From Tubulanus polymorphus (lineage: Eukaryota > Animalia > Nemertea), in contig NC_134032.1 in NCBI RefSeq assembly GCF_964204645.1, positions 10,404,275 through 10,468,274 of the forward strand: a stretch of DNA of 64,000 nucleotides, written 5' to 3'. Both the position numbers and the translations under genes were made by a program. This document shows positions 6,075-47,300 of the stretch, in pieces; position 1 is the first letter of the stretch; each line of letters begins with the position of its first letter. The notes beneath the pieces were generated by a model, which was not told where the DNA came from, did no database searches, and worked only from the letters and a program-made list of their open reading frames with translations.

Positions 6075-6375
6075 ACGCTGAGATTACCTGATAAAATATA
6101 TCATTTAAAAGTAGATTCAGAACTTGCAACTGAAACTGGCCGATGGGGGATGAAAATACGGAGAGATGATAGGATTTGTCCTCATTGCAACACGGCTCTA
6201 GAGGACGAATTTCATTATTTCTCATGTTTTCCAGTCTAAGTTTTAAGGGCCAAATATATTGACAAAAGATTTTATGTGTATCCAAAACCAGTATAAATTC
6301 TCCTCGCTCTTGCATGCAGAAGAGAAACGTGTATTATTTTTTCTATTTTTGTCACTCATATTGTCAAAGACCTTC
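6075..6375 (+). mobile_element. Degenerate 3' fragment of a non-LTR retrotransposon ORF2
   Basis: Translates RFRTCN/ETGRWGMKIRRDDRICPHCNTALEDEFHYF, a typical C-terminal CxxC..EDEFH zinc-knuckle region of invertebrate LINEs. Confidence 0.7.
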
Positions 6376-6903
6376 AGTTTTTCTTGTTGCTATGTACGGG
6401 TGGTGCGACATCCGGGGATATGAAAATTTGAATTTATTCAGAAAGTCTTTGTTCTTTATTCTGTAAAATTGTGATGAAAGTGACCAAAATATTCACATGA
6501 TTTACAAGTATTGGCGGATTTAGGACGGTATCTCTTGGTGTGAAACGTAGGATGAATAACTGTTGGGGGAAAACGGAATCTTGCAAACTAACTAAGCTTA
6601 AGACTCTAGTAGTATAAATGATGCGTGTGTTTATGTACATCACTAAAATCTTTGTCGTTTTCTAAAAGTTTAATTTTCTACTAATATTTGTAAATACTTC
6701 ATATAGTTTTTCTTCATGTACGATAGAAATGGTTGGAGTGTAAATAGATAATTCGTACTATTTCGCAAAGGAAAACTGACAGGATTATTAATAGTTTTAT
6801 GTATTCTGATGCAAGTAGTCCATCATTTCGTTAACGACAGCCATCCACGACATTATGCCCTCATATATATCTATGGATTGAAGGCCTAATAGATGGGAGT
6901 AAA

Positions 6904-9628: not shown

Positions 9629-10168
9629 TTATGACCCTAAAACGGCGCATTTCGTATTTCCTCCCGAGCATCTCAACTTCTTTCCAACCACGATCAAAAT
9701 TGAGCCCAAAAAAATCTGGGCCAAACAAGCCATGACCCCGACCCCTAGAAGCGGGTCGACGACGTGATGGGTAGCTGCGCTAGACCTGTCTTTCTGCGTG
9801 AGGAAGTCCGTATGAAGCACGTGTCCGAGAATCAGACTAAATAGATAGCATACGAAGAGCATACAGTTATAGACGGTAAGAGCAATTGCAGCGCCATAAA
9901 TACTTCTCGTAGACTTGCAGCATTTGTTCGACTTGACCGCGCAGGCGATCATTAGTGCAAACCCGATAGTTCCACACGGGATGTACGTCTGGTAGGCGAA
10001 GTTATACGACTTGACGTAGAGACCGATCTCGACTCCGAGATTGATCATGGCCAGCGCGATTATGATCTTGGCGACCATGCCAGTGATCTTGGCTGCGGTT
10101 TCGTCCAGTTTCGGTCCGCCGCCCTCGGCATCATCAACCTTAAAGCTGCTACAGTTCATGTTACCCAT
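9629..10168 (-). CDS. Small 4-TM membrane protein, copy 2 (subfamily A, 179 aa)
   Basis: Paralogue of copy 1 and nearly identical to copy 4. 5'UTR intron donor at 11649-11654. Confidence 0.85.
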   Translation of the reverse strand: MGNMNCSSFKVDDAEGGGPKLDETAAKITGMVAKIIIALAMINLGVEIGLYVKSYNFAYQTYIPCGTIGFALMIACAVKSNKCCKSTRSIYGAAIALTVYNCMLFVCYLFSLILGHVLHTDFLTQKDRSSAATHHVVDPLLGVGVMACLAQIFLGSILIVVGKKLRCSGGNTKCAVLGS

Positions 10169-12738: not shown

Positions 12739-13326
12739 TTATTCCAAAGAGTCGACTTTATTGTGTCCGTGGCCGTTTAGGCGGCTTTGTTTTGTTGAGA
12801 TCAGTCGTCCTGAATTTCTTCTCAATTTCTTCCCAACCACGACTACTATCGCGCCCAAGAAAATCTGCGCCAGGCTGGAAACAACACCAGCTCCGAGTAG
12901 CGGGTCGACTACCTGATGAACGGACGGGTTGCTCCGTTCCGGATCCATAAACCAGCCTTTAGTGTTGATCAAAGCGTGGCCCAGAATCACCATCACGAGA
13001 TAAACGATAAACAGAATAACATTCTGAAAAATGATAATGATTCCATACGTGTATATCGATTTGAAAAAATCGTCGCGCATGTATTTCTTCAATCGATAGA
13101 TGATCGCAAATCCGTAACCGATACATCCACAGGGGATGTAAGTCTGATAGCAAAGGTTATACGACATAACGTAGAGACCGATCTCGACTCCGAGATTGAT
13201 TGTTGCCAGCACGACTATGATCACAGAAACCATGCAAGCTATCTGGGTAGCTGTTTCGTCTAATTTCACCCGTTCGGCATCAGCTTCATCGAATCTAGAA
13301 AAATTGCGGTTCATTTGGTTTCCCAT
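12739..13326 (-). CDS. Small 4-TM membrane protein, copy 3 (subfamily B, 195 aa; likely start MGNQ at 13326)
   Basis: Same motifs as the other copies. An acceptor (ttctag) just upstream of the MGNQ ATG places the track's longer start inside an intron. Donor near 13625-13630. Confidence 0.85.
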   Translation of the reverse strand: MGNQMNRNFSRFDEADAERVKLDETATQIACMVSVIIVVLATINLGVEIGLYVMSYNLCYQTYIPCGCIGYGFAIIYRLKKYMRDDFFKSIYTYGIIIIFQNVILFIVYLVMVILGHALINTKGWFMDPERSNPSVHQVVDPLLGAGVVSSLAQIFLGAIVVVVGKKLRRNSGRLISTKQSRLNGHGHNKVDSLE

Positions 13327-14299
13327 CTTCCGTCTAGAATTAAACATGATAAGCCAAAGTTCCATCGAGAACTATCTGTAACACAGGGACCGCAGGTTTA
13401 CACATAAGCACTTGCTACTCTATTCAAAAGGATGGCGTGGTGAGCGAGGTAAACCAGTAAGCATTCACATGAAAAAATATGACCCGTGCTAATAGTTGGC
13501 ACGGTCCAAATCTAGCCCACATCAAACAGGTACGGGCCCATTTAGCGCCAGTGTGAAAATAGGTGCAGCCCTCAGCCACGGACCAATTATCGACTGTAGT
13601 TTCTTTTCACCCAACGTAAACTTTACTTACCCTATACTCGTTTCTCTGCACTCTCTAATTATGTTGGGCTTCCGAAATTATGATTAGGTATATATTCGAG
13701 AGGTATATATCAGTATCAAACGAATGTAAACTGCGTAGATATTGAAATCAATAATCCTTGTATGCCTGATGTAAAACGTATATATCTGAAATAGCTTGAT
13801 AAGGTCACCTTGAAGTAACCTATGGTACACGGAAATAATGTCATGTTCGATATCTAATCAGTCGAGTCGTGTGGGGTAGTGTGATCCAAGTTCCCAACAA
13901 ATATATCTTCCGCGTCTTGACCTGTGTCAGCATATGCGCATTTTACCCTGGCTAGCTTTAGGTCGATTTGCACATCTAGAAATAGGATTCCGTGAATTCC
14001 CAAAGATTCCACCATTCCGTTTTTAACAATACAGACAGTGTTGTGAGGCATCTCGGGATTTACATTCGGGCGATGACTAAGAACACAGTGATTTTATCGA
14101 CGAGAAATCGTATTTCAAATGGTATTAGTTTATGAACTTTTAAGTTGAGAAGAATGTCAAAAATACTTTCAAATAGGCTAGATGCACGTGATTTGCTATG
14201 AACATATTTAGATTTACAATCCATTGGAAGTAGAATTAATGTACTATCGTCACAAGGGACGTTCATTGAGGAAGTAATTTAAGGGTTTCGACTGGGTAT

Positions 14300-14603
14300 A
14301 TTCAAACCCCCAGAAAACAACTGGCTTATTAAATGATTATATCTTAATCAAGCTGTTATCATAGTTTACTTTGATTGCATTTTGTGTGTTAAGGGTTGAC
14401 TGTGAGCATATTATTTTCTTTATTGCATTTCTCTTTTTTTCTTTTCTCTTTTGAGGGGCCTGTTTTATACAAACTATTCCTTAGTTTCTACAGGCCCCTC
14501 CAGGTCTAATTTACTGTATTTTGTATTATGCTTTGTACACTATGCTGTAAATTATATTTGAAAAATAAAGTGTTCAAATCAAAATCAAATCAAAAAATCA
14601 AAT
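14300..14603 (+). mobile_element. LINE 3' tail (CR1/L2-group-like)
   Basis: Stem-loop gaggggcctgt (14453-14463) / acaggcccctc (14490-14500), then AATAAA and a (caaat)n tail. Confidence 0.6.
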
Positions 14604-14744
14604 AGTCTTTGGATTGCTTATAGATGACGCTGTTACCGACAGGATTTACAATAAATCTGTGTATTCTGATGTACGTAGTCCATCAGATCGGTAACGACAT
14701 CCATCAACGACCCTACCCTCATATATCTTTGGATTGAAAGGAGG

Positions 14745-15120
14745 ATGATGAACTCGACAGTGATTCGTGCGAACCGATTTGGCGGTTTAGCCTATGCTCG
14801 TCCGGCCCGCAAATTTGTCTTCACCTATTAGTTTACGCCGATTCTGTTAAGAGGAACTGTCGGTAAAATCTTTCCTAGTCGCGGTGTTCATTAGACGCAA
14901 CGAGTGGAACAAATCCGGCGTCATCTTCATGTTCTGTCTAGCTATAACAGATGGATTGTAAATGATGACTATGGGTGTTCATACCCGGCTTATATACATC
15001 TGCCGGGGACAGAGATATAGTATCGACATAACTGTTCGAAGCCAAGCAGGATGCAAACTATAAGCCGTCATACTTTTTTTGAGTTAAGGCGCGTCAGCGT
15101 TCCTCGCGATAGCCATGGCA
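14745..15120 (+). pseudogene. Truncated pseudogene copy of the 6904-7938 GPCR
   Basis: High nucleotide similarity to 6904-7287 and its upstream flank. Early in-frame TAG (ACC TAT TAG) and indels. Similarity then jumps to the parent's 3' flank (15150-15330 resembles 8415-8595), so TM4-7 are deleted. Confidence 0.88.
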
Positions 15121-16100
15121 GCTTTGTCAGCTTTCACGGTCATGTGACGCGAACTTGAAAAATCGTTGGATCTTATAATCAACAGCCTTCCAGCAACACT
15201 ATATCTTAATCATTTCGCTTTGCATTACGGTAATGCCCATGGCTACACAAGGAATCACGGGTATTCTTTTCCAACATTGTGGTAACCACCTCTTCGATTA
15301 GAGTGATGACCACATGCAATCACATACGAGCTGGACCGGGGCGTCTAACCTTGACCGTAAAAACCTCCTACCCTTTGTTGCAGAAGAAGATTGAATAACT
15401 TTTAGAATAACCTCTTTTAAAATTCTATATATGTTTAGAATAATTTATTTCGTTTATTAACCCATTTCTTCTCAATAACACGTAAAAACAACATAAGCAG
15501 ATAACTTTTGAAATCCTAAATCAATACACATGTAATGGGATTCATTCACTGAACACGATTACAAAAATGCCTCGTTTTGTACACAAAATATATAAATGAT
15601 TGTTTTAGAACATGTTATTTCTATGAATGAAATTTTAAAACAACGCAGATATCATAGTTATACTAACATGAATAAATGAACGTATGTACCTAAATGATAA
15701 TGACAAAAATAAAATAATAGATATAGCAGGAAAGCAGCAATAGTTGATTTTCTGCATTAATAATGACCTTGCTCTGATTGCGAATTTTTTGTCCACAAGT
15801 GTGATTCCGCTATTTTGTTCGCACTGCGCATTCTTTTTGCAGTGATTTACAAAACTGGACGTACAGGAAAGTCAAAGCCACGTCAAAATGATGAATCGAT
15901 GACATCTATAAATTTGCGAACCGTTTATCTAATACTTGAACCTGAGAATATTGGACCGGGAGTGAGTTTAGTCATTCGACTGAAAAACGTTAAAACCATT
16001 ACCGGCCCAGAATACTTGATGAACAAATGCCATCATTATTTTCTACGCGTTACTTCATCATCACCATCATCAAACCAACGCTGCCGAAATATAAGTATTT

Positions 16101-16646
16101 TTAAAAAGGTTTCTTAATTTCGAGGCATTTCGTATTTCCTCCTGAGCATCTCAACTTCTTTCCAACCACGATCAAAATCGAGCCCAAACAAATCTGGGCC
16201 AAACAAGCCACGACCCCGACTCCTAGAAGCGGGTCGACGACGTGATGGGTAGCTGCGCTAGACCTATCTTTCTGCGTGAGGAAGTCCGTATGAAGCACGT
16301 GTCCGAGAATCAGACTAAAAAGATAGCATACGAAGAGCATACAGTTATAGACGGTAAGAGCAATTGCAGCGCCATAAATACTTCTCGTAGACTTGCAGCA
16401 ATTGCTCGACTTGACAGCGCAGGCGATCGTTAGTGCAAACCCGATAGTTCCACACGGGATGTACGTCTGGTAGGCGAAGTTATACGACTTGACGTAGAGA
16501 CCGATCTCGACTCCGAGATTGATCATGGCCAGCGCGATTATGACCTTGGCGACCATGCCAGTGATCTTGGCTGCGGTTTCGTCCAGTTTAGGCCCGCCAT
16601 CTTCGACATCATCAACCTTACATCCATTACAGTTTCTGTTACCCAT
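16101..16646 (-). CDS. Small 4-TM membrane protein, copy 4 (subfamily A, 181 aa)
   Basis: Core almost identical to copy 2. Candidate 5'UTR donor at 17003-17008. Confidence 0.85.
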   Translation of the reverse strand: MGNRNCNGCKVDDVEDGGPKLDETAAKITGMVAKVIIALAMINLGVEIGLYVKSYNFAYQTYIPCGTIGFALTIACAVKSSNCCKSTRSIYGAAIALTVYNCMLFVCYLFSLILGHVLHTDFLTQKDRSSAATHHVVDPLLGVGVVACLAQICLGSILIVVGKKLRCSGGNTKCLEIKKPF

Positions 16647-17450
16647 ATTCCAGGCCTAAACAAATATGATTATCATCCAAGCATTAGTATCATAATCGTT
16701 ATTATTACTATTACTGTGAGCCAATGATTTTTGTATGTTTTTGTTTTTTATTTGTAGTAACCAGATTACTAAATTTAGATAATGCTGCAATTTAAAGTTT
16801 GATTTTAGGTAGTTAGCCGATCTAGATATCAGATGATTCCTGCTTCTGGTCAGTGTATAATATATCAAAAATACCAGGCTACACTGTATAGTATTACCTG
16901 GATGAAACTGAAAAGAATATGTTCATTTTCCCGAAATGTTCCCCGATTGACCCGATCTAAGATTGCAACCCTACTTTCAAATCAAACGTTTATATTATCG
17001 CTACTCACTTTTTCCGTCCTCCTTTTGAATCTGTATTGTTTATTATGGAATTTCAACACAATATTCAGTGCTTAGTATTAATCTTTAGGTGTGGCTATAT
17101 TTCTGTTTCTGAAACAACGTTCTCGCGTCACGACATAGAGGAATCAATATACGACAACGTACGTATATGGAACTACGCAGTAACGTACTTGAAAATAGCA
17201 TAGCTTCGTCACGCGAACAGGCTTGGTTGTTGAACTGTAGATGCTAGAGTAACCAGACAGTTTACTCGATAGGGGTCACCTTGATAATAAATCCTCATTC
17301 GTCAGGTGTACGTCCGTTGGCAAGGTGAGAATGTTGTTCATTGTCAAACATAAATCTCCTGGCCCGGTTTCAAAGAGTATAAATCCTCCATTTGGGTGAC
17401 AGCCATCAGTAATAATCAGCAACACCATGGTGACAAATTTCAAAACGTGT

Positions 17451-17565
17451 CCAGGGCCCAGTTTCACAAAAAGGTTTAACTCTTAAATCGATTTAATTTC
17501 TTCATTTATTCAATTTATCTTAAATCGATTTAGGCCTTAATCCTTTTTGTGAAACTGGGCCCTGG
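17451..17565. mobile_element. MITE family 2, apparently nested in an older related element (~17358-17602)
   Basis: Perfect 24-bp inverted ends ccagggcccagtttcacaaaaagg / cctttttgtgaaactgggccctgg. A half copy lies at ~243-289. Confidence 0.85.
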
Positions 17566-18270
17566 GATCATTTTGCATCTGCATTTATGAAACCCAGCCC
17601 TGAATCTAGAAAAGAGAAATGGTGAAATTTGGGCGATCTGAAGGATGGGCGGATTGTCCGAGGATGGATGACACAGAGAGCCGATTGAAAGCTGTATTAG
17701 ACCAATGAGCTTTGTAAAATAAGAATAATAAACTTATATAGAAAGTTACGAATTTATTGGACCGTGACTTATTAAGAAGAGCAAAAAAACATTCATCCGC
17801 AACGTATTGTTATTGTCGACCGTGTGACACCAAGGTTCAATGTTATGATTCATAAGATAATTGTGTTCGGATTCTTAACACGGATATCGTCACAACAAAT
17901 TCATGTCTCTGTGTATAAGATAGATATCTTTTTATTTTCATCTGAACACGTAATCGGAAATAACGAAGGCATATGAATAAATATACAATAAAAGTTATCG
18001 TGATCCCGATGATAAGGTTATAATAGGAATTGATATCATAAAACATAAGAAAAAGTCCCGCTTCCCAAGAATGGCTTTGTGTCATGATAAATGATCTAAA
18101 AAATGAATTTCTTTAAAAAACGCCATAGATTTAAAGGAAATATGCATCTTAGTCGGATTTATTTCGTTTATCAAACTCATAGTGGGTATTCGACAACAAC
18201 TCTTGGTGGAATTTTACACACACGTTTCAGCTTAACCGAGTTCGGAGACAGAGTCTGAAACATTTTCTTT

Positions 18271-18816
18271 CTAAATGGGTTCGTTATTTGTAACGATAAG
18301 CTGTCCTCGATATCTGATCTTTTTCCCAATTACGATCAGTATCGCACCCAAACAAATTTGGGCCACGCTGGATACGACACCGACCCCGAGAATTGGATCG
18401 ACTATGTGATGGACGGCCGGGGTGTTTCGTTTGATTTCCGTGAACCAGCCGGGAGTTTCCATCAAAACGTGGCTCAAAATCAAGGTCATAAGATAGCAGA
18501 AAAACAATATACAGTTATAGACGGTGATGACGATGCCGTAAATAAAGATCGATTTAATGATCCCCGATTTGTTTTTCTTGATTCCGCTAGAGGTCACTGC
18601 GGCGAAAGCGATAGTTCCACACGGGGCGTACGTCTGACAGCAAAGGTTAAATGTCATGACGTAAAGACCGATCTCGACTCCGAGACTGATTGTTGCTAGC
18701 AGTATCAGGAAACCAGTGACCATGGAAAGGACCTGTTTCGCAGTTTCGCCTATTTCAATCCTTTCTCCGTCGACATCGTCGTTATACGACATTCGCCTGG
18801 TAATTTGGTTTCCCAT
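18271..18816 (-). CDS. Small 4-TM membrane protein, copy 5 (subfamily B, 181 aa)
   Basis: Same motifs, with cag acceptor directly before ATG. Donor at 19433-19438. Confidence 0.85.
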   Translation of the reverse strand: MGNQITRRMSYNDDVDGERIEIGETAKQVLSMVTGFLILLATISLGVEIGLYVMTFNLCCQTYAPCGTIAFAAVTSSGIKKNKSGIIKSIFIYGIVITVYNCILFFCYLMTLILSHVLMETPGWFTEIKRNTPAVHHIVDPILGVGVVSSVAQICLGAILIVIGKKIRYRGQLIVTNNEPI

Positions 18817-20071
18817 CTGTAAGAAAGGGATAAAGAGTGTACAAGGCTACATCGAATAACAGCTAGTCGTGCGGTCATGCGCTCTTATCACGTGCAATGC
18901 CATATCGACGGTCAAACACGATGGTCGATTTACATGACGAATCCCTGGAACCATATTTCATATCTTTTGTTTTATGTATGGCAAGTCTCCTACACTGAAG
19001 GATAAAATGATCTACACCACGGGACATTCATAGGGGTTTTCACCAAGAACACAGTTCTATATATATAGTCACTAAATGCGACCAGGACTCGTAAACGAAA
19101 TCCACCATAGCTGGAACGTTGTAATTAAGTCCCCCGCACCACTTTAGGGACAAGGGTTTTCCAAAAATCCGTGTTATCTTCACGGCGTCTGCGCGTGAGA
19201 GATCTGTTCTATACAGTCACTCCATACACACAGCTGTGAGGGGAGAGTTCACCACGAACCCAGGCGAGAGGAGTCCATATATTTATTCATCATCCACACC
19301 AGTCCATACGGTTCTTGGTGTACTCTCGGTCACCTCACATAAATATCCGTGGGAGTTACTACAGTTAAAGCGGAGTATCTGTGTGTGAAGTAGGAGCGAT
19401 CTGCAAATATTTACTAAACTGTCGGTACATGTACTTACGTTTAGTTTTTCGACTCCAAATAGAGCGAGAGCAGGAAAATCGATATTTCTGATGTAACAGT
19501 CACGTGACGAAAGTCATGCGCGGTTCTTTTCGATAGTAGCCATGAACTTACATAGACGATTAACCCGACAAATATCGCGATTGCAAATATCGGACAGATT
19601 TATTTTTAAGTCTTCGTAATAAATTTTCTTACGCGCTGATTTCATAAATCATATTAACCTTAATTGATAAAATTTCATACAAGCGTCGTGTAACATATAC
19701 CGGTATTTATGCCCGGCGAGAAGAAAAGCATTTTACAAAAAAAGTTACATGCATCTTACAGTCGTCATGCAGCCATTATAGCGATCGATTGCCCTCTGAA
19801 AGGATTTAAACTTGTTTTAGACGTGTTGAAAAAAGGTGTAGGAACTTCTCCCAGAAAAAAACCTGAATCCTAACCATTTTACAATCGACTGACGATTTTT
19901 GAGATGTCTTTCTGATATGCTACTGGCGGTGGCGACTTGCAGTCGTATCCTTGGGCGTTACGGCAGCAATTCGTGCAGGTATCAATTTGCTGTCTGTACC
20001 TACCCTTAGGTAATCTACCGCCTGAACCGACGATCACCTTTTGCGAAGTCTTGATGCTCGTAGTCCGCGCA

Positions 20072-20272
20072 TGGTGTAATTTAGAGGTGATGGGGGACGA
20101 ATATCACTTTTTTCACGTCTGCCCGCATTTCCAGGAATTCAGAGCTAGATACATCCCGGAGCGCTATTGGAGATTCCCCAATAGCGTCAAGTTGTACAAT
20201 TTATTCAATTAAAATTGCCAAACCCTTAAAAAACTGGCGTTGTATATTACGCAAATGTTTAATACATTTCTA
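20072..20272 (+). mobile_element. 3' fragment of a related LINE ORF2
   Basis: Translates CNLEVMGDEYHFFHVCPHFQEFRARYIPERYWRFPN..KL, matching the 6.2-kb fragment. Confidence 0.7.
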
Positions 20273-21049
20273 ATGACGATAAATGTTGTAATGTATATTA
20301 TAAAATACTTTTGTGCTCTGTGCAGTTGTATAGTTGTGGAGTAAATTAATTAATTGTAATTGTAATTTTGCCTGGGTCAGGTGACAAATGTTGTTCAATT
20401 TCAAAAGGAATTCCTTGAGTCTTGAAAGGAGAATTAATGAAGATAGGACGGTACGTTTTTTCAAGGATGGCTTTTGTCCGAGGATGGTGATACAGACAGC
20501 GCATGGGCAGGCATTAGACCAAGCTAGAAAAAAATAGAATGATAAACTTGTAGCAATTTACGAAATTATTTGAACTGTAAATTTCTACGAGTAAAAAAGC
20601 TACATGCGTACCAATTATTGCCTGAATTCAGGGCAGTGACGCCAATCTTAGCAACGGTTGGATATTATCATTTACAGGCTTCTATCGACAAAAATTGTAT
20701 TCATTTCAAATACCGACATTATCACATCAAATTCAGGTCTCTCAGAAATGTTTTTTCTTTATTTTCATTTAGCACAAAATCGGAAATAACAAGTACGTAT
20801 GAATAATATGTACAACCAATTTAATTGTATTGTCAATAACATCATAATGATGGCTTTTAAGGATGAAATCAGATAAATCCATTTAAAAATAAACGCGATT
20901 GATAAAGGATAATATACAAAAGCTAGTTGGATTCATCGGGCTCCGAATCAATATTCGACACCAACTCGGAGTATGTACAGTTTTTCCAGGGTCCGTCGTA
21001 TATTACTTGAATTCGTTGGACTGCAGTCCTCGGCGAACTATTATCGTTT

Positions 21050-21601
21050 CTAAATGGGTACATTATAAGTAACAATACGTTTCCCTAGGTATCTGAATTT
21101 TTTGCCAATTACGATGAGTATCACGCCGAAGAAGATCTGGGCCGCGCTGGACGCGACACCGACCGCGAGAAGTGGATCGACAACGTGATGGACGGCTTGG
21201 GAGTTTCGGTTCTTTTCCGTGAACCAGCCAGGAGTTTCCAACAATGCGTGACTCAAAATCAGGGTCATAAAATAGCAGAAAAACAATATACAGTTGAAGA
21301 CGGTGATCAAGATGCCGTAGGTAAAGATCGATTTGATAGTTCTCAAATTGTTGTTCTTTATTCCGCTAGAGGTCACTGCAGCGAAAGCGATAGTTGCATA
21401 CGGGGCGTACGTCTGATAGCAAAGGTTAAACATCATGACGTAGAGACCGACCTCGACTCCGGTGTTGATTGCAGCTAGCGGTACTATGGCAAGAGCGACC
21501 GCGGAAAGGATCTGGCTCGTAATTTCATCTATTTCGATCTCCTCCTCTCCTCCGTCGACATGATCGTTTTCAGAAGATCGATCGATTATCTGGTTTTCCA
21601 T
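21050..21601 (-). CDS. Small 4-TM membrane protein, copy 6 (subfamily B, 183 aa; starts MENQ)
   Basis: Closest to copy 5. ATG at 21601 aligns with paralogue starts and follows an acceptor. Donor at 21887-21892. Confidence 0.82.
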   Translation of the reverse strand: MENQIIDRSSENDHVDGGEEEIEIDEITSQILSAVALAIVPLAAINTGVEVGLYVMMFNLCYQTYAPYATIAFAAVTSSGIKNNNLRTIKSIFTYGILITVFNCILFFCYFMTLILSHALLETPGWFTEKNRNSQAVHHVVDPLLAVGVASSAAQIFFGVILIVIGKKFRYLGKRIVTYNVPI

Positions 21602-24903: not shown

Positions 24904-25951
24904 GTAAGAAATTTCATCTGTCACATTATTTTTTTCATTCAATATAGATATTAAAGAATTTAGAATCAAGTTTTTAAATTCGGTTACCGTAAGTAATGAA
25001 ACCATTTTACAGTTGCTATAGCAACCGTTTTGTAGGGTACTTATGTCCTGCATTGTTGGGTCAGTTTTTCTCTTCTCTATAAACTTTTTGTGATGCGTGA
25101 TTTCATCACCGATCCCGAGACAGATTTTGAAAACTTCGGCAACATTTAAACCGCTTGAATCTCTAGTTTTTAGTTGCGTAAAATTAATTTCTCAATTCCG
25201 CAACAATGCGACATGTGAGCGATACAAAAAAGTGGTCAAGTTTGCCACACGCGTTCATATTTGGGGTACTCAACTTTAAAGCTGGTCATTTTCACTGAAA
25301 GATTTTGAAAAAAACTCCCCCTTGAAAATGAAATTTAAGATTTTAAGATATTTAGCCAAGTTTCCATTTCAAGGCTATTTCATGGCAGGTTACTCAACTT
25401 AATAAATCTCGTTATTTTTTTTGGAAAGATATTCGAAAAATTCAAACATTTCTAGGCCCCTTTTTAATGGAATTCAAAATTTTAAGATATCTTGCTGACT
25501 TTTTATAGCGGCGTGTCTTTTGTCATTCCGAGATTCAGCGCTATTTTCGACGTGCCTGTTTCACCTCTCGGGTGTAGTTTGTTTTCATTTTCACTACGAT
25601 GGTCTCTTCTGAAAAATGGTTTTTTATTCAAATGAAAGTACGTTGAACGGTAACTGCCACTCGTCTCTATATTCTACGCTGCGAGTTAGATAGGAAATCA
25701 AAATGGCTTAACCTCGTACATCAAATGATTCGAGGTCTTTACTTACCAATAAGTGAAATCCAACAAGTTCTACCGCCTAATATGTCACAAGAAGCAAATC
25801 CAAGTGATGACTACAATCTTCACATCCCTAATACGATGTATTTTTGAATTTCTTTAAAAAGTACTCAGTTAAATTGAGTCCACACTGCAACTGATATACT
25901 GGATAAAGAATTGAACCGAATAGTTGTCTTAGATTAATTAAACATTACAGA

Positions 25952-28900
25952 ATGCTGCACGTTTCGGTTATTGTGGTGACGATTTTCGTTCAAGCGATTG
26001 ATGTGGTATCGGGTCACGGTGGAGCTATTAACCTCTACCCAGGACAGCCCGCTCCAGGTAAGAACATTTTGAAATAGTTTTCACAGATTTTACAAACAAT
26101 GTTGGTGATGTCATAGGGGGATTTACGAAGGAGGCAATCTTGGGGTCATTTTGATGTTTTCCTTGAGGGTTAGACTTCTTAGGAGGAGGTAAACTTCTTT
26201 CCAGGGGACGGAGCCTTAAGGGGATAATTTGAGACTAGAAAGGCATCCATCTTTTGACGAAAATGGGTTATGACGTCATGGAGGATTTTTCGAAGCGACA
26301 GTGAAGTGAAGTTTTTTCGAAGCCACATTTCAAAGGGATGAATAGTTCAATGATATTCTCACAGAGTTTTAATGAAACGAAAACGATTAATTTTTTAATC
26401 AAAAATTGAATAAATAGATTAGGTCACTGAATTAGCTGCTTTATTTCTTTATTTTCAGCTGCACCTAATTTGATTCGTGAGTAATGAAAAACGTGTTTTC
26501 GCATGGGTTATCGGTTGCATGTAGTAGTGCTAGGCAATGTGTTACACACTATGCATATTGTTGAATTAGTAGTTTATTTTACCTTATTTTTATAGCATTT
26601 TATTCTTAACACAGTCTAAATGCATATGTCTGATGTATTTCCAATCTAATAACATAATGTACATGATATAAAGATCTGAAATGTATCCAACTAGCACACC
26701 TAGCGGGTACTCAATTGCCAGAAGAGGAACCTCTACTGCGGCATCTGATATATTGCTAGAAAAGTGAACTAATTATGCGCACCACTCGGGGGTCCTCGAC
26801 TGCCAAACGAGGAATCCTAGGCGTATTTACCTTGATATTTTCTTTTGAGTACATAATTTAGAATTAAAACTAGGATATCAGTGCCGCGCACATGTGGATC
26901 CTATAAACGCCACATTTGATCTCTAATAACAGATATCTTGTAAAATCTAAGATAATTACTTATCGGACTATCCGACTAGGGATCAGGCGGATCCCCGTTT
27001 GCTAGTGGCAATTATCTTTAAAAGTAACTTAAGTCTTTTGCTGTCACCACTCGGTAAAATATCATAATTGATATATTATGTAAACCTACTGCAAAGTATA
27101 AAACTCCTAAATGCTAACTTAATAGGCTTACTCGTAACCCAGGCCATGGTAAACTCGATCGCATATATAAAATAAATGAAATGAAAATAGATATGAATAT
27201 AAATTGGTTGAAATGAAAATCTATCGTGACAGAGACCTATTCGGGGAAGCCGTGTGTTAGCCAGTACACGTATAATGGAGTTACATACAAAAACGAATGC
27301 ACGAAAGCCAGTTACACGAAATACTGGTGCGCAACATCAACCGACTTCCCGGTTAACTCCAACGCCTGGAGCGTATGCGGTGAGTATAGTTGAAAATAGG
27401 AAACTTCAAGTCACATCGAATGAAATAGTAGATGAAAAAAAGAAATGTTCAATTTTTCTCTATATTCCCGTTTTTGTAGACCACGATGTCGGCGTTAAAA
27501 GTTACACTCGTAAGTTTTAATTTGTAAAATTATCCAAGAACAAGAAGGCAAAAATCGGAATTCTCCTCACAAAACTCTGAAGCCGAGTTCAGTTTATTTC
27601 ATAATGTTTAATGGAATTGCGTTGTTGATTTATTTGCGGCGGTACAGTTACGAAAAAAGGCCGAAACTGTTATTTCCCGTTTCTCTACAACGGTAAACAG
27701 CACTACTCGTGCGTCGAATGGGAAAAGACCGGTAAAAAATGGTGCCCGACGTCGAGCATTTATTCCAGTTATGCGTTCACATGGAAAAATAAATGGGAAT
27801 ATTGCAGTAAGATTTAAATTTGAAGTTTAAACTGAGGATCTATCTGAAACGTCTTTCTAACCGTCTCGGGATATGGATTTATACTTCTGTAAAACAAAAT
27901 CTTTAAGCAACTCTGGTACTAAATTGAGTAACGCCTAGCTTAAACTGAACTTATCTTTTGACCATCAAACTTAAACTATTCTAAATTTCACCTCGAAGTT
28001 ACTCTATAGTCTTTAGCGTAACTGAACGTAACCTGTTAATCAACTTAACTAACCCAATTATTTAACTGCTCTTTAAGTTGATATGGCTTTAATCAATACA
28101 GAAATCCGGTCGTAAACTGATTAAAAGTATAAAAATAACTTAATGGAAAATTTGAAATGTTCAGTTGTTGGAGCATTTCAAAATTTCAGCAATGGCTTTA
28201 GTCATTTCAAGTGTTTCTACTTAAGTTAATGTTCGCAGACCATTCATCCTCAGTTATTCATAAAATACTTTTCAATTCCAGTTGCTGCTTTTTGGTGTCA
28301 GTACAGCTTATTTTCCGAATCTGCAAAGATTGTACAATTTTTATGTATGCATGCTTTTTTCTGAATGAAATCTTTTTCAAAAGTTATCGATAACGATACC
28401 ATCGATCATAGATTGAGTTCCTTATACTGGAATTCATGAAAAGAACAGTTGCATGGTTGGCTTACTAATGAATCAACCCTTCTCGAAGATGGCTGCCTGT
28501 ATAAATCATTTATGATGTCATCAAACCCAGTGTTTCTCGTGGTGTTTACGTGCTTATTCCTTCGATGATGTCATGAGGGGAATGTAGAGGCAGGCATCGT
28601 TCATTTCATGGTAGCAGCCATCTTTGATATTGACGTTTCAGAGAAAGATAAGAAAAAAGGCGGTTCGGATGAAAGCTCTGAGGAGGAAAAAGATGACTCT
28701 TATAGGATTCCAGGTAAGCTGGGCCCTTATAGGTTAGAAATGCGTGAAATACTATAAGACGGATCGAATTTGTAGTATGTTTGTAGAATTGCCTATTGCC
28801 ACTAGTCGGTAATCTGGTGGGATAGGTAGTGCTCTAAAGCTGGTTAGAACATTTGACCTGCCCAGATTTGGGATTAAGGGATGGTATCTTAAATCGGGTA

Positions 28901-31900
28901 ATGGCTATTCTTAGAAACCCTATAATCTCAGAATAGGTAGACCTACTGTTAGCGATGAGATCATATGGAACCTGCCTTTTTAAGTCAGGTTCCAGTCAGT
29001 CTCCAGAATACTGACTGAGGTTGTCCTAGATGAGCCAAGCCATAGACTGGAGGGAAGAAATAAACTTAGACCTGCCTTATCTTCAATTTTAGCGCCTGCT
29101 GTACCCTATGACCCACTTTATCCTCGTACCTGTAACCCAAACGATAAGGTTTGTGTGATCACGCTGGTTGTGGAAGAACATCTGACAATGGTTTACAATA
29201 AAGAGTTGATGACCGCTAAAAACGGAAAACTTCTTGATAAGGCAAACAATATTGTCGATTCAAACAAGGTAAGAAAAGTACCAGAAAAAAAAGATTTGAT
29301 GAAGGGTCTTCTACTCCTCCCCATTTTCTCTCTCTCTCTCTCTCTGTTTACCCTCTCTTTCCAGGCCCCCTCGTCTTTCTTCTCGTCGTCCCATATCACT
29401 CTTTTCTCCTTCCACTATTTCTTCCCATTCTCTCTTATCACAAACCTCTATCGCCTTAAACCCCTCTGACCCAAGCTACATGTTACAAAGATTTACCTCG
29501 ATAATTGAATCAAGTCTTATTCAATTTCTATTCCAGGTTATTGTCGGTGACAACTGGTATTTGCCACGTAGGGCTATAGTCGTCAATGGGACACTCCCGG
29601 GGCCGCGACTGGACGTTTACGAGGGGCAGAAACTTGTCATCAACGTCCATAACAAAATGTTCAGCGACTCCACGACTATCCATTGGCACGGGCTTCACTC
29701 CAAGTCTACCCCCTACTTCGACGGCGCTTCGTTCATCAATATGTGCCCGATTCCACCCAGTCTGATCGTCACAAGTCCGATTATGGCGGCCCCCTACGGC
29801 ACACATTGGTACCACACGCATGTCGGGTTCCAGATGGGCGACGGGATGTTCGGACCGTTGATAGTGCATAAGAAAAACGCCCCTCAATACGCAGGGGATT
29901 TCGTGATGACGCTTGCTTTGTGGAATCACCATCACGGCACGAACGAATGGTTCCTTTACGAGGAGAATCACAAGATGTTCTCACAACTGAACAAAAAGTA
30001 AATTTGACTTGAATGTTTTATAAAAGATCTTTTGAACTATGATCAAGTCCAGACAACTCAATAGACCACAATCCACTGTCCAGGCCCAAGTTTCAGAGCT
30101 CTTTATTAAGATTTGGCTCTAATTTCAAATCATTGGAAATAAGGACTCTTCTATCTTCACGCACAACTTTGGAACTGTATCCAAATCTTAAGTTTTTTCC
30201 TCACTGTTGAAACGACAAGTTAAAATTCACTTCGTTCTTTCCTACAGATATCACAATGAAACTAAATTCCGTCGATTTTCGAGCGGTTTAATCAACGGTA
30301 AAGGCAGGTTCCAGGCAGTAGACGGTACCTTCATCACGGACGGACCTTTGGAGACGTACACCGTCGAACCGGGCAAGAAATACCTGTTCCGTATCATCGG
30401 CGCGCAGGCGCACAAGCAATTCGCCGTCAGCTTCCACGGTCATCAGTTCCAGGTTGTGGCGTCAGATGGCGCCGACATCAAACCGTTCATGGCCACGTCT
30501 GTCATAGTAAGCGGGGGCGAGCGATTTGACGTCATTTTGACGGCCGACCAACCCGTCGACAATTACTGGATCGAAGGTTACACGAAGGATAACTGGAAGG
30601 CCCACGCGATCTTACACTATAACGGCGCCCCCAACGCCGACCCGACTGGTCCATTGAGAAATCCGCTCGTTTGCTCGGCCGCGAAACCTTGCACCGAAGT
30701 CTGCGACTACCCGAAACCGAAATCTTCGAACATCAATTGCGAGACCTTCGGAACGATCAAGTCTCTACCGGCCGTGCCGCCGCCCGCGATGACGCACAAT
30801 TCCCCGAAAGACATCTTCTTGAATTTCGGCCGCCCCGGTTACACGGGTAAAGGTCCACCTACGATCAACGGCATTCAATTCAAATTCCCAACGACGTCCG
30901 TCCTGAGCGACCCGAATACCGGTATCACGGAATGCGACCCGTCGAAGTGTGGTACGGACAAGCTTTGCGCCTGTACGCATCATTATCATATCCGTAAGGG
31001 TTCCACTATACAGATGGTGTTCATGAGTATGGGCAAGGGCCGCGGCACGCACCCTATACATCTTCACGGTCACTACTTCAGCGTGTTGAAAGTCGGTTAC
31101 CCTCGAGTGGACGCGAACGGCAAATTCCTCGGTGATAACTCGGATATCGTCTGCGACGGGTCGTTCTGCAATCAGGGCAGTTGGAAGGATCCCGCCTGGA
31201 ACAAACAAATACCGGGTCTCAATTTGGTCGATCCGCCGCTGAAAGATACTCTGAATATCAAACCAGGTGGCTACGCGGTCGTGCGCTTCAAGGTTTGTAA
31301 ATAGATAAGATATTTTTGATTTCTTCAATGGGAATTAGGTTATGTAGGAATCGAGGATCTGGCAGATTGGACAGGGTGAAGTCAAGCTCCCGAAGTGATG
31401 TAGGGTCCATTAGGTAGCACTAGTGGTGTGAGGATGTTACTCTATAACGGGTAATTGGGGAACTGGCAATGCGACTGTGGCAATCGAGGATTCATCAGGG
31501 GCGCTAATGTGAAGTCAGAATTACAAAATATGAAACTATGTATACCGATTTATATAATACTATCAGAGTTTAAACGATATGAATAATTTTCATATGAAAT
31601 TTTCACAAGATCACTGAAAAAAACAGCGTAAAGAGGCATTAAAACTATAATAATGCTACATTAAGGACTGCTTCGAAGCAACAGTAATACGTAGCTTGTA
31701 CAAGAAGTCAGCCATCAGAAAATTAACAAAATGAAATAAAGAGACATACTAATAAGGCGAAAAGACATGATACAGATCAGGAAACTTATTACTTTCGTGG
31801 CTTTTGGAAATTAAGAAAGTGACGATAATCTTTTTTTTTCTTTGATATCTTCTTCAGGCGGATAATCCGGGAGTTTGGATATTGCATTGTCACATCGAAG

Positions 31901-32362
31901 AACATTTGGCTGGAGGTATGGCGCTGGTATTCCTGGAAGGTCAGGAAGAATGGAATGTACCGGACGAGTTTCCTCAGTGCGGTCACTACACACCTTTCTT
32001 TACTCGAAAAGCTGCCAAAATGAGTAAAAAACGTTCGCAGCTCAGGTAAGCCCGATTACTCGTTCATACCTTCACATATAATTCACATTTCGAATGCTTC
32101 CACTGATATCCCCATGACATCATCAAAAGTCCTATTCATATCCCCCCTGAAAAGATGGCTGTCTGCATGAACCCCTTCACGATTTATCCGTACATAGACC
32201 ATTCTTGTAGACATGAATCATCAAATCATCCAAAAGACCCATTCTAGACAGATGTTAGTAAATCCCCCTAGACATGGTCAATTCTTCCCTGAAACTGGCC
32301 TAGCAGTGCCCTCGTCATTCAAAATTTCTTTTTCTTCGGTTATTTTCAGAAAACGGTCATAA
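25952..32362 (+). CDS. Secreted laccase-type multicopper oxidase with two N-terminal FN2 domains (~804 aa)
   Basis: Exons 25952-26057, 26459-26476, 27233-27379, 27480-27509, 27648-27806, 28642-28713, 29093-29268, 29537-29997, 30248-31292, 31858-32045, 32350-32362. All introns are GT-AG and the frame is continuous (2415 nt). Signal peptide [21 protein letters not shown]. Copper motifs [17 protein letters not shown] and [12 protein letters not shown]. Confidence 0.9.
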
Positions 32363-44389: not shown

Positions 44390-47300
44390 ATGTTGGAGGT
44401 AGACATAGACGTGGTAAGTCAGAAGAAAAAACTTCTTTGTAGTAATTAACAGAAATCTTGAGTTTAAGACGATGCTGTTTTGTTAAAGGCATTTCTAAAA
44501 CTGGGACCCAGTTCCACAGTTGCTATTAGACTGAAATATATTCAAAATCAGTTAATTTATTGTTACTTAAGCTAGATTCAGCCCACGCAATTCTAGTACC
44601 ATAGATAAATATTTTAGAAACAATTCAAAACTATTATTTCATTTTAAAGAAATCGCGTAATTATCAAAATTATCAATGTTATGACGACAAAGAAAGCGAC
44701 AAAATTATCAGAGCATAATGAAACAAAATTTATCAACGTCATGAAGGTTACTGTTTAGTAGAAAAACATGTTTTCAAAATTTTCTTCAATTTCTTGACAT
44801 TAATTCAGTAATTTTTCCACTGTATAGTATATCGTATAGAATACAAGGCCACGGTGTTTCGCTTATTTCCTTAAATGAATTAAGCTGCTAGACTGGATTA
44901 ACTATAGGGGATTTAAGAAGAATTAACGCGTATGTCGATTTTATAACCGTGTCATTAAGATAGAGCGCTTGTCGAGACGCGCTTCACGGGTCCGGAGTTT
45001 ATTCGGCAGTTGAAAAGTTCACAGTTTAAAATCATTGCCCATACCGTTACAAGTTCATTAAATGATTTAAAATCAACCAGGCATACCTTATCTTCAAAGT
45101 CCACTTAATTTTCTAAACCTCAATTTTCATTTATGGAATATACGTATGATTCAGCAACCTCTGTGGCGCCCCCAGCCGACGATTTCAAGAATTTCAATGA
45201 ATACCTTCATTAGGGATTCACGCATTTTAAATAACTATATATTTCTTGAATGATCGTAATTACAGGAAATGTGATGATGTCATAGGGGGTTTGTGAGGAG
45301 GCCATAGTTTGTGGAAGGATCTAATAAGGTCTTATTTAATGACGTCATACGTAGAAGGCTTTATAGTGTCAGCCATTTTTCGGATGTTTTCTTACGCGAG
45401 AACGTCAATTGGAAAAATGAAGTATCTGTTTTCATAACGCCTCCTGTACAAAAGGTTCTGAAACGGGTTTTTTACGGTTCAGTGAACTAACAGTAGTATC
45501 TACACCGGGGCTAAACGAGTTTTGTTGGCAGTACTGTGAGCGGTATAATAGGTCTCAGCACACCAGGACTTGACTATTAAAACCTGATTAATCAACTCAG
45601 TATACTGGAAATTACGTGTGAGAACAAAAAACCATTAAATCCTAGCGGAATGCATTATTGTATTGAGCATTGCAGGAAATCAATTGAGCGAAACGTTATT
45701 TAACGGCAAAATTCTTCGACATAAAAAAACGAAATAAAACAACTTGAAGATAGGAGGCCGCTGTGGTTGAGAATGTTTTCAGCGCATTATTTTCTAAATG
45801 CTATTGTTTTAAGATTTCTAGATCTTCGCAGATATTAGCAGCAACTGTGGGATTTTTCCTCAGTTTTGGAAAACCTTGGTTCTTTGCTCCTAATTTCAAT
45901 GAAAATATTTTCTCTAAGTATAGGGCCTATACTGCTATACATACGGTTGGGAGAGACTTTGGAAGGGACTCAAAGGGTTCAGTAAAGTGTAAGTTTAACG
46001 AAACCATAGGTATTTCAGACATTGGGTTCAAACCCTGTACATTACCGCGTAGTGTCCCCGGGCAACTTATCCTCAGGAGTAAATGGGTAGCTGGTTTGAT
46101 TAGACGACTCCTGACTGAGCACCTAGCAGCTGCTCGGATGTTACTTCTCAACAGGGAGAGATGACTGATAAATGTTTAGAGCTGGGGGTAATAATACCAA
46201 TATAATGGAATGCGCCGTTGAACATAGTATCACGGTGAAGAGGGCGCTTTAGAAATCAAACCACTATTACAATCTCATATTACATCTTTCTGGAAGTGTC
46301 TTTATGATATACTTGCCTACAAAGGTGTCATAGAGATATTTATGACGGTAGCCAGTCTTTTTCTCAAAGGGTCTACGCGCTACCTAATAATCTACTGATG
46401 TCATATACTAGGTAATCACGGAGGTAGCTATCATCATTCCAGGATGAATCTACTTATTGTCAAAGGACGCTCGACTAATAGAAAATGTTGGCGTGTCTCC
46501 TTAGAAACGACCGTACCTCCCGCGTAGTAAGATCCTTTGACGACCACGCACGGGGTATTGTCAACAAACTATCCGGCATTGTGATCTAAACAATACGTTT
46601 TCATCAGTAATTCATGTAACTGCGGAAACAGCCCCAGTTTGCGGCCCTTCAATAGAAACTGTATATTACAACATGGTTATTAGTATATTAGGTAGATATC
46701 AACAAGTAAACTGTGGATTTTACGCACAGCTAGGGATTTATTTAATGCAGTTGAGTCCGAGGCCAGGTAAACAATTTTCAGGTATATATATTCGGATAGA
46801 ATACTGTAGGGACTCAGTTGGGGTAAGATTCTGAGTCAGTAGACTCAGTCTCTCACTCGGTAACGTTGAGTCCGGTAAAATCCAAACCCAAGTTAGCGTC
46901 AAATACTGAATAAGAGTTTGTGAAATAATATACAGTAGACTCTGTTTCTAACTGCGATAACGTTGAGACTGGCTTAATAATCCTTCCCCGAGCTCTGTCC
47001 CTTATATTGGAGACAATACCTGGTAAATTTGAGACCGTTTAATATTCGCGGCTGCCGATAAGAATGCCAAGTAAAAGGTTTGGGAGCCGAGCACAACTTT
47101 TACGATTCAAAATCTGTGTCGGGATAAGTGATAACTAACTTAGTCAGCACTGGTTGGGTTTAGGTAACTCATTCTAGTTCAGTTGGATTATTTGGAAGCC
47201 CTTTCTTTCTCTGTCTAAATCAGAATGCACAAGGAGCTAGTCTAGAGCTGTCGTTTGGACAAGACCACGATCAAAAACAAACGGATAATGGTAATTCGGC

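What the first reader, a model, noticed from the sequence alone, without database searches (positions are those of the whole stretch)
25952..32362. FN2-FN2-laccase: a secreted multicopper oxidase with tandem fibronectin type II domains
Seen in sequence: short exons invisible to the ORF track encode a signal peptide and two FN2-pattern modules ([45 protein letters not shown]; [49 protein letters not shown]). They join in frame to a complete three-domain laccase with all ten His, the Cys and the axial Met. Established: FN2 modules bind collagen/gelatin (fibronectin, MMP2/9) or phosphorylcholine (BSP proteins), and animal laccases cross-link catechol-containing matrices. I know of no characterised laccase with FN2 domains. 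Inference: a matrix-targeted oxidase for curing a collagenous cuticle, tube, egg case or adhesive.
Basis: partly seen in the sequence, partly recalled or inferred. Interest (0 to 1): 0.85.

Follow-up and report, generated by a model that had tools for sequence, protein, structure and literature searches.

The report
Ribbon-worm laccase with fibronectin-II modules
A ribbon worm (Tubulanus polymorphus) has two genes for a secreted copper oxidase (laccase) carrying two small collagen-binding-type modules at its front end. I found this combination in no other protein or paper I could search, so it is a real but lineage-restricted gene-shuffling novelty whose role is untested.

Summary
At 25952-32362 (+) lies one GT-AG gene of Tubulanus polymorphus. 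It encodes a signal-like exon, two fibronectin type II (FN2) exons and a complete three-domain laccase.

- **Domains:** Pfam and solved-structure searches confirm both FN2 modules and all copper motifs.
- **RNA:** spliced contigs of one run join the first FN2 exon to the laccase.
- **Unproven parts:** inclusion of FN2-2 and the signal exon have no RNA support here.
- **Public model:** RefSeq's protein for this gene (588 aa) is truncated and lacks the FN2 part.
- **Paralogue:** a copy 6 Mb away (RefSeq, 790 aa) has signal, FN2, 30-nt micro-exon, FN2 and laccase, with identical intron phases. The tandem FN2 cassette therefore predates the duplication and has been conserved.
- **Origin:** the nearest FN2-less Tubulanus laccase has a phase-1 intron after its signal exon, which fits insertion of phase 1-1 exons.
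- **Elsewhere:** no other laccase among about 270 closest relatives, no Atlas cluster and no paper shows FN2 with a multicopper oxidase.

Matrix targeting is plausible but untested. Verdict: new variant of a known kind, of moderate interest.

The parts
25952..26057 (+). Exon 1: start codon and hydrophobic signal-like N-terminus; ends in phase 1.
   Evidence: ATG, then a run of hydrophobic residues, then donor CAG|gtaaga. It matches exon 1 of the paralogue at 34% identity, E 2e-4, in colinear position. No RNA contig covers it. No signal-peptide predictor was run.
27233..27379 (+). Exon 2: FN2 module 1 (147 nt, phase 1-1).
   Evidence: fn2 19.7 bits, E 8.7e-4. MMP-2 FN2 4.1e-5 and CI-MPR FN2 9.1e-5. 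It is 56% identical to a 147-nt paralogue exon that scores 25.7 bits, over the cut-off. Its last 29 nt are spliced to the micro-exon in X4 contig 25.
27480..27509 (+).
   Evidence: X4 contig 25 joins 27379 to 27480 and 27509 to 28642, with GT..AG borders. The splice sites are good and the exon is in frame. The paralogue has a 30-nt exon at the same place, present in RefSeq protein P0151.
27660..27806 (+). Exon 3: FN2 module 2 (147 nt, phase 1-1). Probably a cassette exon; inclusion was not observed.
   Evidence: fn2 38.3 bits and MMP-9 1.4e-12. It is 45% identical to the paralogue's module 2, which scores 28.0 bits. Its only in-phase acceptor is purine-rich and weak. No spliced X4 contig holds it; only unspliced DNA-like pieces of X2 and X3 cover 27626-27840.
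28642..28713 (+). Exon 4: charged linker (72 nt, phase 1-1) ending ...YRIP.
   Evidence: Both borders are confirmed by X4 contig 25. The paralogue has a 60-nt exon that also ends ...YRIP.
29093..29268 (+). Exon 5: N-terminal Cys-x-Cys region usual in lophotrochozoan laccases (176 nt, phase 1 to 0).
   Evidence: Borders are confirmed by X4 contigs 25 and 26. It is 62% identical to a 176-nt paralogue exon. The same region follows the signal peptide in P0152 and P0156.
29537..29997 (+). Exon 6: first cupredoxin domain with the HWH and HTH copper motifs.
   Evidence: Cu-oxidase_3 1e-31. Junctions are in X4 contig 26. Identical to P0001.
30248..31292 (+). Exon 7: second cupredoxin domain and most of the third, with HPIHLH.
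   Evidence: Cu-oxidase 2.5e-28 and Cu-oxidase_2 1.3e-18. Junctions are in X4 contig 26. 100% identical to P0001.
31858..32045 (+). Exon 8: HCHIEEH-x4-M (type 1 copper Cys, His and axial Met); ends in phase 2 at CAG|gtaagc.
   Evidence: Cu-oxidase_2 4.7e-10. The acceptor is in X4 contig 26. The donor is inferred from the C-terminus of P0001.
32350..32362 (+). Exon 9, coding part: last 13 nt (R-K-R-S and stop).
   Evidence: Acceptor ttattttcag|A. The resulting end ...SQLRKRS equals that of RefSeq protein P0001.

Best explanation
This is one protein-coding gene of the ribbon worm Tubulanus polymorphus (NCBI LOC141910001, whose public model is truncated).

Product (shown). It has a hydrophobic signal-like N-terminus, one or two fibronectin type II (FN2) modules joined by a 10-residue micro-exon linker, a short charged linker, and a complete three-domain laccase-type multicopper oxidase with all copper ligands.

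Origin (inferred from gene structure). A cassette of phase 1-1 exons was shuffled into the phase-1 intron that separates the signal exon from the mature laccase. This happened before a gene duplication that gave two copies on the same chromosome.

Isoforms (partly shown). Every cassette exon is phase 1-1, so any of them can be skipped without breaking the frame. An isoform lacking FN2-2 exists.

Function (inferred, about 45% likely). The FN2 modules are a non-catalytic anchor. They hold the secreted oxidase on a collagen-like or other extracellular ligand, so that the quinones and radicals it makes from phenolic substrates act locally. Candidate sites are secreted mucus or tube material, basement membrane, egg envelope and wounds.
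For: Domains and motifs.

RNA:
- X4 contig 25 joins FN2-1, micro-exon, exon 4 and exon 5. X4 contig 26 joins exons 5 to 8. All borders are GT..AG.
- The source-like DNA run X1 shows no such joints, so a retrocopy is not the source.
- Database protein P0001 (NCBI, T. polymorphus) is identical from mid-exon 5 to the stop.

Conservation:
- The paralogue at C8:16.48 Mb (P0151, 790 aa, precomputed Pfam fn2 plus three Cu-oxidase families) has the same order, the same exon lengths (147 and 176 nt, 30-nt micro-exon) and the same phases.
- Module 1 pairs with module 1' and module 2 with 2'.

Tree: the two FN2-laccases are sisters (support 100). Next to them is FN2-less Tubulanus P0152 (support 99). P0152 has a phase-1 intron after its signal exon.

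Anchor idea: the nearest solved and predicted relatives of the modules are the gelatin-binding FN2 domains of MMP-9, MMP-2 and fibronectin, and that of the mannose receptor. FN2-2 keeps the FPF, Y-x-G, WC and W-x-Y-C consensus.
Against: - No RNA contig holds FN2-2, the signal exon or the first 118 nt of FN2-1. The FN2-2 acceptor is weak.
- Coverage was patchy, contigs only and one sample of unknown tissue.
- Signal-peptide status rests on reading the sequence.
- Nothing here tests ligand binding, substrate or place of expression.
- FN2-1 lacks the FPF motif and falls under Pfam's cut-off on its own.
- FN2 domains can also bind phosphorylcholine or other ligands (established for BSP/PDC-109 proteins), so collagen is not assured.
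Confidence: 0.55

Rival explanations
1. In this copy FN2-2 is a decaying or rarely used exon. The protein actually made carries only FN2-1 plus the micro-exon linker; the two-module form survives only in the paralogue.
For: The only RNA contig across this part goes from the micro-exon straight to exon 4. X4 depth is zero over 27530-27929. The only in-phase acceptor of exon 3 follows a purine run, whereas the paralogue's has a good pyrimidine tract. A search for short database proteins holding exon 3 found none.
Against: Exon 3 is an open 147-nt phase 1-1 exon with a good donor. It scores higher on fn2 (38.3 bits) than the paralogue's module (28.0 bits). It keeps all four Cys and the aromatic consensus despite an old duplication with path length 0.72. 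X4 also has zero depth over the first 118 nt of exon 2, which must be transcribed, so holes in these contigs say little.
Confidence: 0.25
2. The FN2 modules bind a non-collagen ligand, such as phosphorylcholine lipids, glycans or microbial surfaces. The enzyme would then be an immune or wound phenoloxidase, or a mucus-chemistry enzyme, rather than a matrix-curing one.
For: PDC-109, a phosphorylcholine-binding FN2 protein, is among the matches. FN2 occurs with many partner domains of varied function. The genome holds at least 65 FN2 modules, many in long arrays, which suggests a lineage-specific use of the module. From general knowledge, mollusc laccases have been linked to immune phenoloxidase activity.
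Against: The best matches are the gelatin-binding modules of MMP-9, MMP-2 and fibronectin. There are no data on ligands here either way.
Confidence: 0.25
3. The oxidase part is not a phenol-oxidising laccase but a ferroxidase or ascorbate-oxidase-type multicopper oxidase, held on the matrix or cell surface by the FN2 modules.
For: Automatic names of relatives include 'L-ascorbate oxidase' and 'ferroxidase'. Sequence alone does not fix substrate preference in this family.
Against: The closest named relatives and Atlas clusters are mostly laccases. No substrate-site analysis was done.
Confidence: 0.1
4. The FN2 exons and the laccase exons belong to separate genes, and the in-frame model is a coincidence.
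For: RefSeq's model for this locus (P0001) starts inside exon 5 and has no FN2.
Against: A spliced RNA contig joins FN2-1 to exons 4 and 5. The paralogue's RefSeq protein holds both parts. All phases fit. P0001 lacks a signal peptide, which a laccase needs, and it starts where contig coverage starts.
Confidence: 0.03

Closest known systems
Animal laccase-type multicopper oxidases (mollusc laccases; insect laccase-2 and other insect multicopper oxidases)
   Same: Three cupredoxin domains, all four copper-binding motifs, an axial Met, and an N-terminal Cys-containing region after the signal peptide. Identity to mollusc, Hydra and Lineus proteins is 36-42%.
   Different: None of about 270 closest relatives examined carries FN2. 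Here a 100-150 residue FN2 cassette sits between the signal peptide and the mature enzyme.
Tubulanus polymorphus LOC141910414 (P0151, RefSeq 'uncharacterized protein', 790 aa)
   Same: Paralogue on the same chromosome with about 65% identity. It has the same signal-FN2-micro-exon-FN2-linker-laccase order and the same intron phases.
   Different: It has an extra 18-nt micro-exon (encoding PRGDVI) after the signal exon, and no intron before the last copper motif. Its FN2-2 acceptor is strong. Its public model is full length, whereas the window gene's is truncated.
Gelatinases MMP-2 and MMP-9 (FN2 triplet inserted in a catalytic domain)
   Same: An enzyme fitted with tandem FN2 modules, which in MMPs bring the catalytic domain to gelatin or collagen. 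These are the best sequence and structure matches of the modules.
   Different: The catalytic domain is unrelated (zinc protease against copper oxidase). The MMP modules are inserted within the catalytic domain, not at the N-terminus. Binding is not tested here.
Other modular laccases seen here: laccase with chitin-binding and CUB domains (P0105), laccase with a Hint module (P0125)
   Same: They show that animal-type laccases do acquire accessory binding or processing domains.
   Different: The domains differ and sit at the C-terminus. The sources are unnamed assemblies.

Membership tests
Three-domain laccase-type multicopper oxidase | Three cupredoxin domains (Pfam Cu-oxidase_3, Cu-oxidase, Cu-oxidase_2) in order | tested here: met
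   E-values 1e-31, 2.5e-28, and 1.3e-18 plus 4.7e-10, all over the cut-offs.
Three-domain laccase-type multicopper oxidase | Four copper motifs with ten His, one Cys and an axial ligand (HxH, HxH, HxxHxH, HCHxxxHxxxxM) | tested here: met
   HWH and HTH in exon 6, HPIHLH in exon 7 and [12 protein letters not shown] in exon 8.
Three-domain laccase-type multicopper oxidase | Secretion signal | tested here: inconclusive
   Exon 1 is short, hydrophobic and conserved with the paralogue. No predictor was available, and no RNA support was seen.
Three-domain laccase-type multicopper oxidase | Oxidation of phenolic substrates with reduction of O2 | not testable with these tools
   Needs an enzyme assay.
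Fibronectin type II domain (Pfam PF00040) | Score over Pfam's gathering cut-off (22.2 bits) | tested here: met
   FN2-2 scores 38.3 bits. FN2-1 alone scores 19.7 bits (not met), but its paralogous counterpart scores 25.7 bits and paralogue module 2 scores 28.0 bits.
Fibronectin type II domain (Pfam PF00040) | Four Cys at the spacing of the two disulfides, plus the aromatic core (FPF, Y-x-G, WC, W-x-[YF]-C) | tested here: met
   The four Cys align with those of the MMP-2, MMP-9 and CI-MPR FN2 domains in both modules. FN2-2 has the full aromatic consensus. FN2-1 has SQY in place of FPF.
Fibronectin type II domain (Pfam PF00040) | Module encoded by a symmetric phase 1-1 exon, typical of shuffled extracellular modules | tested here: met
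   Both exons are 147 nt and phase 1-1. The paralogue's are 147 and 150 nt.
Fibronectin type II domain (Pfam PF00040) | Binding of gelatin, collagen or phosphorylcholine | not testable with these tools
   Needs a binding assay.

The most novel reading that the evidence does not exclude
Tubulanus evolved, by exon shuffling, a matrix-anchored animal laccase. Skipping or including the phase 1-1 FN2 exons sets how many anchor modules the secreted enzyme carries. The two paralogues would be part of a ribbon-worm-specific system for oxidative curing of collagen-containing secretions (mucus tube, egg envelope or wound matrix).
Probability: 0.3. Interest if true: 0.6.

Novelty: new variant of a known kind. 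Interest (0 to 1): 0.42.

Why it matters
Laccases harden insect cuticle, and (from general knowledge) they are suspected in curing mollusc periostracum. How the reactive chemistry is confined to the right matrix is mostly unknown. A natural fusion of a laccase with modules that in vertebrates bind gelatin or collagen would be a ready-made example of enzyme targeting, and it can be tested simply (gelatin binding, oxidase assays, in situ expression).

It is also a clean textbook-style case of exon shuffling in a protostome: phase 1-1 modules inserted in a phase-1 intron, followed by duplication.

It corrects a truncated public gene model.

The finding is confined to one genus as far as the data go, and no function is shown, so its importance is moderate.

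Tried and rejected
Step left out:
- Exons were searched one by one by reference. The database proteins P0001 (this gene, truncated) and P0151 (paralogue) served where a full-length query was needed.

Searches that found nothing:
- P0151 residues 38-150 (the FN2 pair) against 5.8 billion proteins found only itself, from 3 candidates.
- Exon 3 as a 60-aa reference found no short proteins that might show its splice context. The word index may be too coarse, so this is not evidence of absence.
- phmmer and a Cys-pattern search of the four FN2 modules against the 150 best laccase representatives gave no hit. Pfam on the ten with long extensions found no fn2.
- Paper searches (fibronectin type II + laccase; FN2 + multicopper oxidase; nemertea or ribbon worm + laccase) returned nothing on such a fusion. 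Most hits were 'type III' or unrelated.
- A review of nemertean toxins had nothing on tubes, collagen or phenoloxidase.

Readings rejected:
- Alternative acceptor of exon 3 at 27647: out of phase with every upstream exon.
- X2 and X3 as RNA evidence: their pieces are unspliced, include introns and miss exon 6, so they look like low-coverage DNA.
- X4 depth at 25930-26129 and 28330-28529: it comes from repeat-like pieces with loose ends, not from exons.

Not done:
- No structure prediction or complex prediction; the sequence evidence was sufficient and no binding claim between proteins is made.
Full report
**What is in the sequence.**

The window is animal DNA, about 39% G+C with short exons. 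With GT-AG borders and phase arithmetic the pieces form one consistent gene on the + strand.

| Exon | Coordinates | Content | Phase |
|---|---|---|---|
| 1 | 25952-26057 | Start codon, hydrophobic signal-like end | 0 to 1 |
| 2 | 27233-27379 | FN2 module 1 (147 nt) | 1-1 |
| m2 | 27480-27509 | Micro-exon linker (30 nt) | 1-1 |
| 3 | 27660-27806 | FN2 module 2 (147 nt) | 1-1 |
| 4 | 28642-28713 | Charged linker | 1-1 |
| 5 | 29093-29268 | Laccase N-terminal Cys region | 1 to 0 |
| 6 | 29537-29997 | First cupredoxin domain | 0 to 2 |
| 7 | 30248-31292 | Second and most of third domain | 2 to 0 |
| 8 | 31858-32045 | Last copper motif | 0 to 2 |
| 9 | 32350-32362 | Last four residues and stop | 2 to end |

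With every exon the reading frame is 794 codons; without exon 3 it is 745. Exons were handed to the tools one at a time by reference. Two database proteins stood in for full-length queries.

**Domain identity.**

- Pfam gives Cu-oxidase_3 (1e-31), Cu-oxidase (2.5e-28) and Cu-oxidase_2 (1.3e-18 and 4.7e-10) on exons 6-8.
- The motifs HWH, HTH, HPIHLH and HCHIEEH-x4-M supply ten His, the Cys and an axial Met.
- FN2 module 2 scores 38.3 bits on fn2 (cut-off 22.2). Module 1 scores 19.7 bits (E 8.7e-4), just below the cut-off.
- Against solved structures, module 2 matches MMP-9 (1.4e-12), MMP-2, fibronectin and PDC-109.
- Module 1 matches the FN2 domains of MMP-2 (4.1e-5) and the cation-independent mannose-6-phosphate receptor (9.1e-5), end to end with the four Cys aligned.

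**RNA evidence.**

Four runs of one study hold the stretch.

- X1 carries it whole and unspliced, so it is source-like DNA.
- X2 and X3 give unspliced pieces that include introns, so they are DNA-like.
- X4 gives spliced contigs.
- X4 contig 25 (160 nt) reads the end of exon 2, then 27480-27509, then exon 4, then the start of exon 5.
- X4 contig 26 (1818 nt) reads exons 5, 6, 7 and 8.
- All six joints have GT..AG borders and fall exactly on the model.
- X1 has none of these joints, which rules out a processed retrocopy as their source.

So the first FN2 exon is shown to be spliced to the laccase. There is a 30-nt micro-exon with good splice sites, and in this contig it joins directly to exon 4, skipping FN2 module 2.

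X4 has no depth over exon 3, exon 1 or the first 118 nt of exon 2. That stretch of exon 2 must be transcribed, so holes in these contigs prove little. The skipped isoform is real. The included one is unproven.

**Organism and public annotation.**

The exon 7 peptide hits a 588-aa protein at 100% identity. NCBI names it 'uncharacterized protein LOC141910001 [Tubulanus polymorphus]'. It begins at an internal Met of exon 5, where contig coverage begins. It has no signal peptide and no FN2, and it ends ...SQLRKRS, which fixes exons 8 and 9. The public model is therefore truncated at the 5' end.

**A paralogue with the same architecture.**

In the whole genome, module 1 has one close relative (55% identity), at C8:16487214-16487354. 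It lies about 2 kb upstream of another laccase exon at C8:16485044-16485358.

The fetched region matches every exon of the window gene colinearly:

| Window exon | Match in paralogue |
|---|---|
| Exon 1 | 34% identity |
| FN2-1 | 56% identity |
| FN2-2 | 45% identity, E 4e-8 |
| Exon 5 | 62% identity |
| Exon 6 | 76% identity |
| Exon 7 | 59% identity |
| Exon 8 | 82% identity |

- Both of its FN2 exons pass Pfam's cut-off, at 25.7 and 28.0 bits.
- Its exon lengths and phases match: 147, 150, 60 and 176 nt, with all cassette exons phase 1-1.
- NCBI's protein for it (P0151, LOC141910414, 790 aa) carries fn2 plus the three Cu-oxidase families.
- P0151 reads signal, 6-residue micro-exon, FN2, 10-residue micro-exon, FN2, linker, laccase.
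- The 30-nt micro-exon sits at the same place as in the window gene.
- In an alignment of the four modules, module 1 pairs with 1' and module 2 with 2'.

The tandem cassette thus existed before the duplication. The two genes are well diverged: about 65% identity and a path length of 0.72. Preservation of all Cys and consensus positions in both modules of both genes therefore argues for long-term selection, exon 3 of the window gene included.

**Origin.**

In a maximum-likelihood tree of 30 laccases, the two FN2-laccases are sisters (support 100). Their next relative is a Tubulanus laccase without FN2, P0152 (support 99). The Lineus longissimus homologue groups elsewhere.

P0152 belongs to a tandem array of four laccases on C9. 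Its signal exon is separated from the mature exon by a phase-1 intron. A string of phase 1-1 exons inserted into a phase-1 intron is the classical signature of exon shuffling. The genome offers ample donors, with at least 65 fn2 matches, many in long arrays.

**Is the architecture known?**

- None of the 150 best representatives of 1.84 billion proteins has an FN2 match. The few with room for one carry only Cu-oxidase domains, or else chitin-binding plus CUB, or Hint.
- Of the 120 best hits in the 5.8-billion collection, only P0151 has PF00040.
- The FN2 pair as query finds only P0151.
- The 30 nearest Atlas clusters to the whole protein all carry only Cu-oxidase families. Those shown as nearest to the FN2 pair carry fn2 alone or with Peptidase_M10, Lectin_C or PhoD, and never with Cu-oxidase.
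- Paper searches gave nothing on such a fusion.

These searches are not an exhaustive architecture query. The paralogue's predicted protein is already public, though unnamed and unstudied.

**How it most likely works.**

Shown: the gene structure, the domain identities, the FN2-1-to-laccase transcript, the conservation in a paralogue, and a frame-preserving isoform without module 2.

Inferred:
- Secretion, from the hydrophobic exon 1 and from the family's biology.
- An anchoring role for the FN2 modules, by analogy with gelatinases, fibronectin and the mannose-receptor family. In those proteins FN2 binds denatured or native collagen (established knowledge), and they are the nearest relatives here.

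On this reading the enzyme is held on a collagen-like matrix and oxidises phenolic groups there. I put about 45% on this specific function. About 25% goes to a non-collagen ligand with an immune, wound or mucus role, and about 10% to a non-laccase substrate class. From my own knowledge, members of the genus Tubulanus are described as living in secreted tubes. I could not confirm that in the papers held, so it is only a lead.

**Verdict.**

The structural interpretation is right apart from the missed micro-exon and the unproven inclusion of module 2. The functional interpretation is untested. This is a lineage-restricted new domain combination of two well-known families, of moderate interest.

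Noticed in passing
window 26459-26476 (+): Candidate 18-nt phase 1-1 micro-exon in intron 1, with a strong pyrimidine tract and a gtgagt donor. It is the same length as the paralogue's micro-exon between the signal exon and FN2-1. No RNA contig covers it.
   Followed up: partly
L002 (G000:C8:16484000-16493999, - strand); P0151 residues 32-37: The paralogue's 18-nt micro-exon encodes PRGDVI, which contains an RGD motif of the integrin-binding type, just ahead of FN2-1. The window gene's candidate micro-exon has no RGD.
   Followed up: no
G000:C9:9297890-9314324; C1:30620906-30625372; C9:16183548-16194014; C1:20532034-20588073: The genome holds at least 65 fn2 matches, many in long tandem arrays of ten or more modules. 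Three near-identical pairs lie on C1. This looks like a large FN2 expansion in a ribbon worm.
   Followed up: no
G000:C9:5693330-5741767: Tandem array of four FN2-less laccase genes, one of them P0152 (LOC141910498). The genome has ten Cu-oxidase_3 loci in all.
   Followed up: partly
P0125 and P0105 (database proteins from unnamed assemblies): Laccase-type oxidases with unusual C-terminal additions. P0125 (974 aa) has a Hint module (E 4e-52). P0105 (1088 aa) has chitin-binding-like repeats and a CUB domain.
   Followed up: no
L002 (- strand), paralogue intron between FN2-2' and exon 4' (about 460 nt): A tandem repeat with a unit of roughly 48 nt fills most of this intron.
   Followed up: no
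window 49296-55880 (+): A single uninterrupted ORF of 2194 aa. It is acidic, rich in Ser, Asp, Thr and Asn and of low complexity, and it coincides with strong A and G skew. Not examined.
   Followed up: no
window 47242-48014 (-): Repetitive ORFs with a unit of about 25 residues, which suggests a tandem DNA repeat.
   Followed up: no
window 59630-60607, 61435-62379, 63628-63996 (-): Three similar intronless ORFs that look like seven-transmembrane receptors, in tandem. They are perhaps of the same kind as the orphan GPCRs that another note reports at 1920-21601.
   Followed up: no
window 26101-26137, 28507-28564, 29316-29358: Short repeat-like stretches where contigs of several runs end with unrelated loose ends. 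They inflate depth in the read tables.
   Followed up: no
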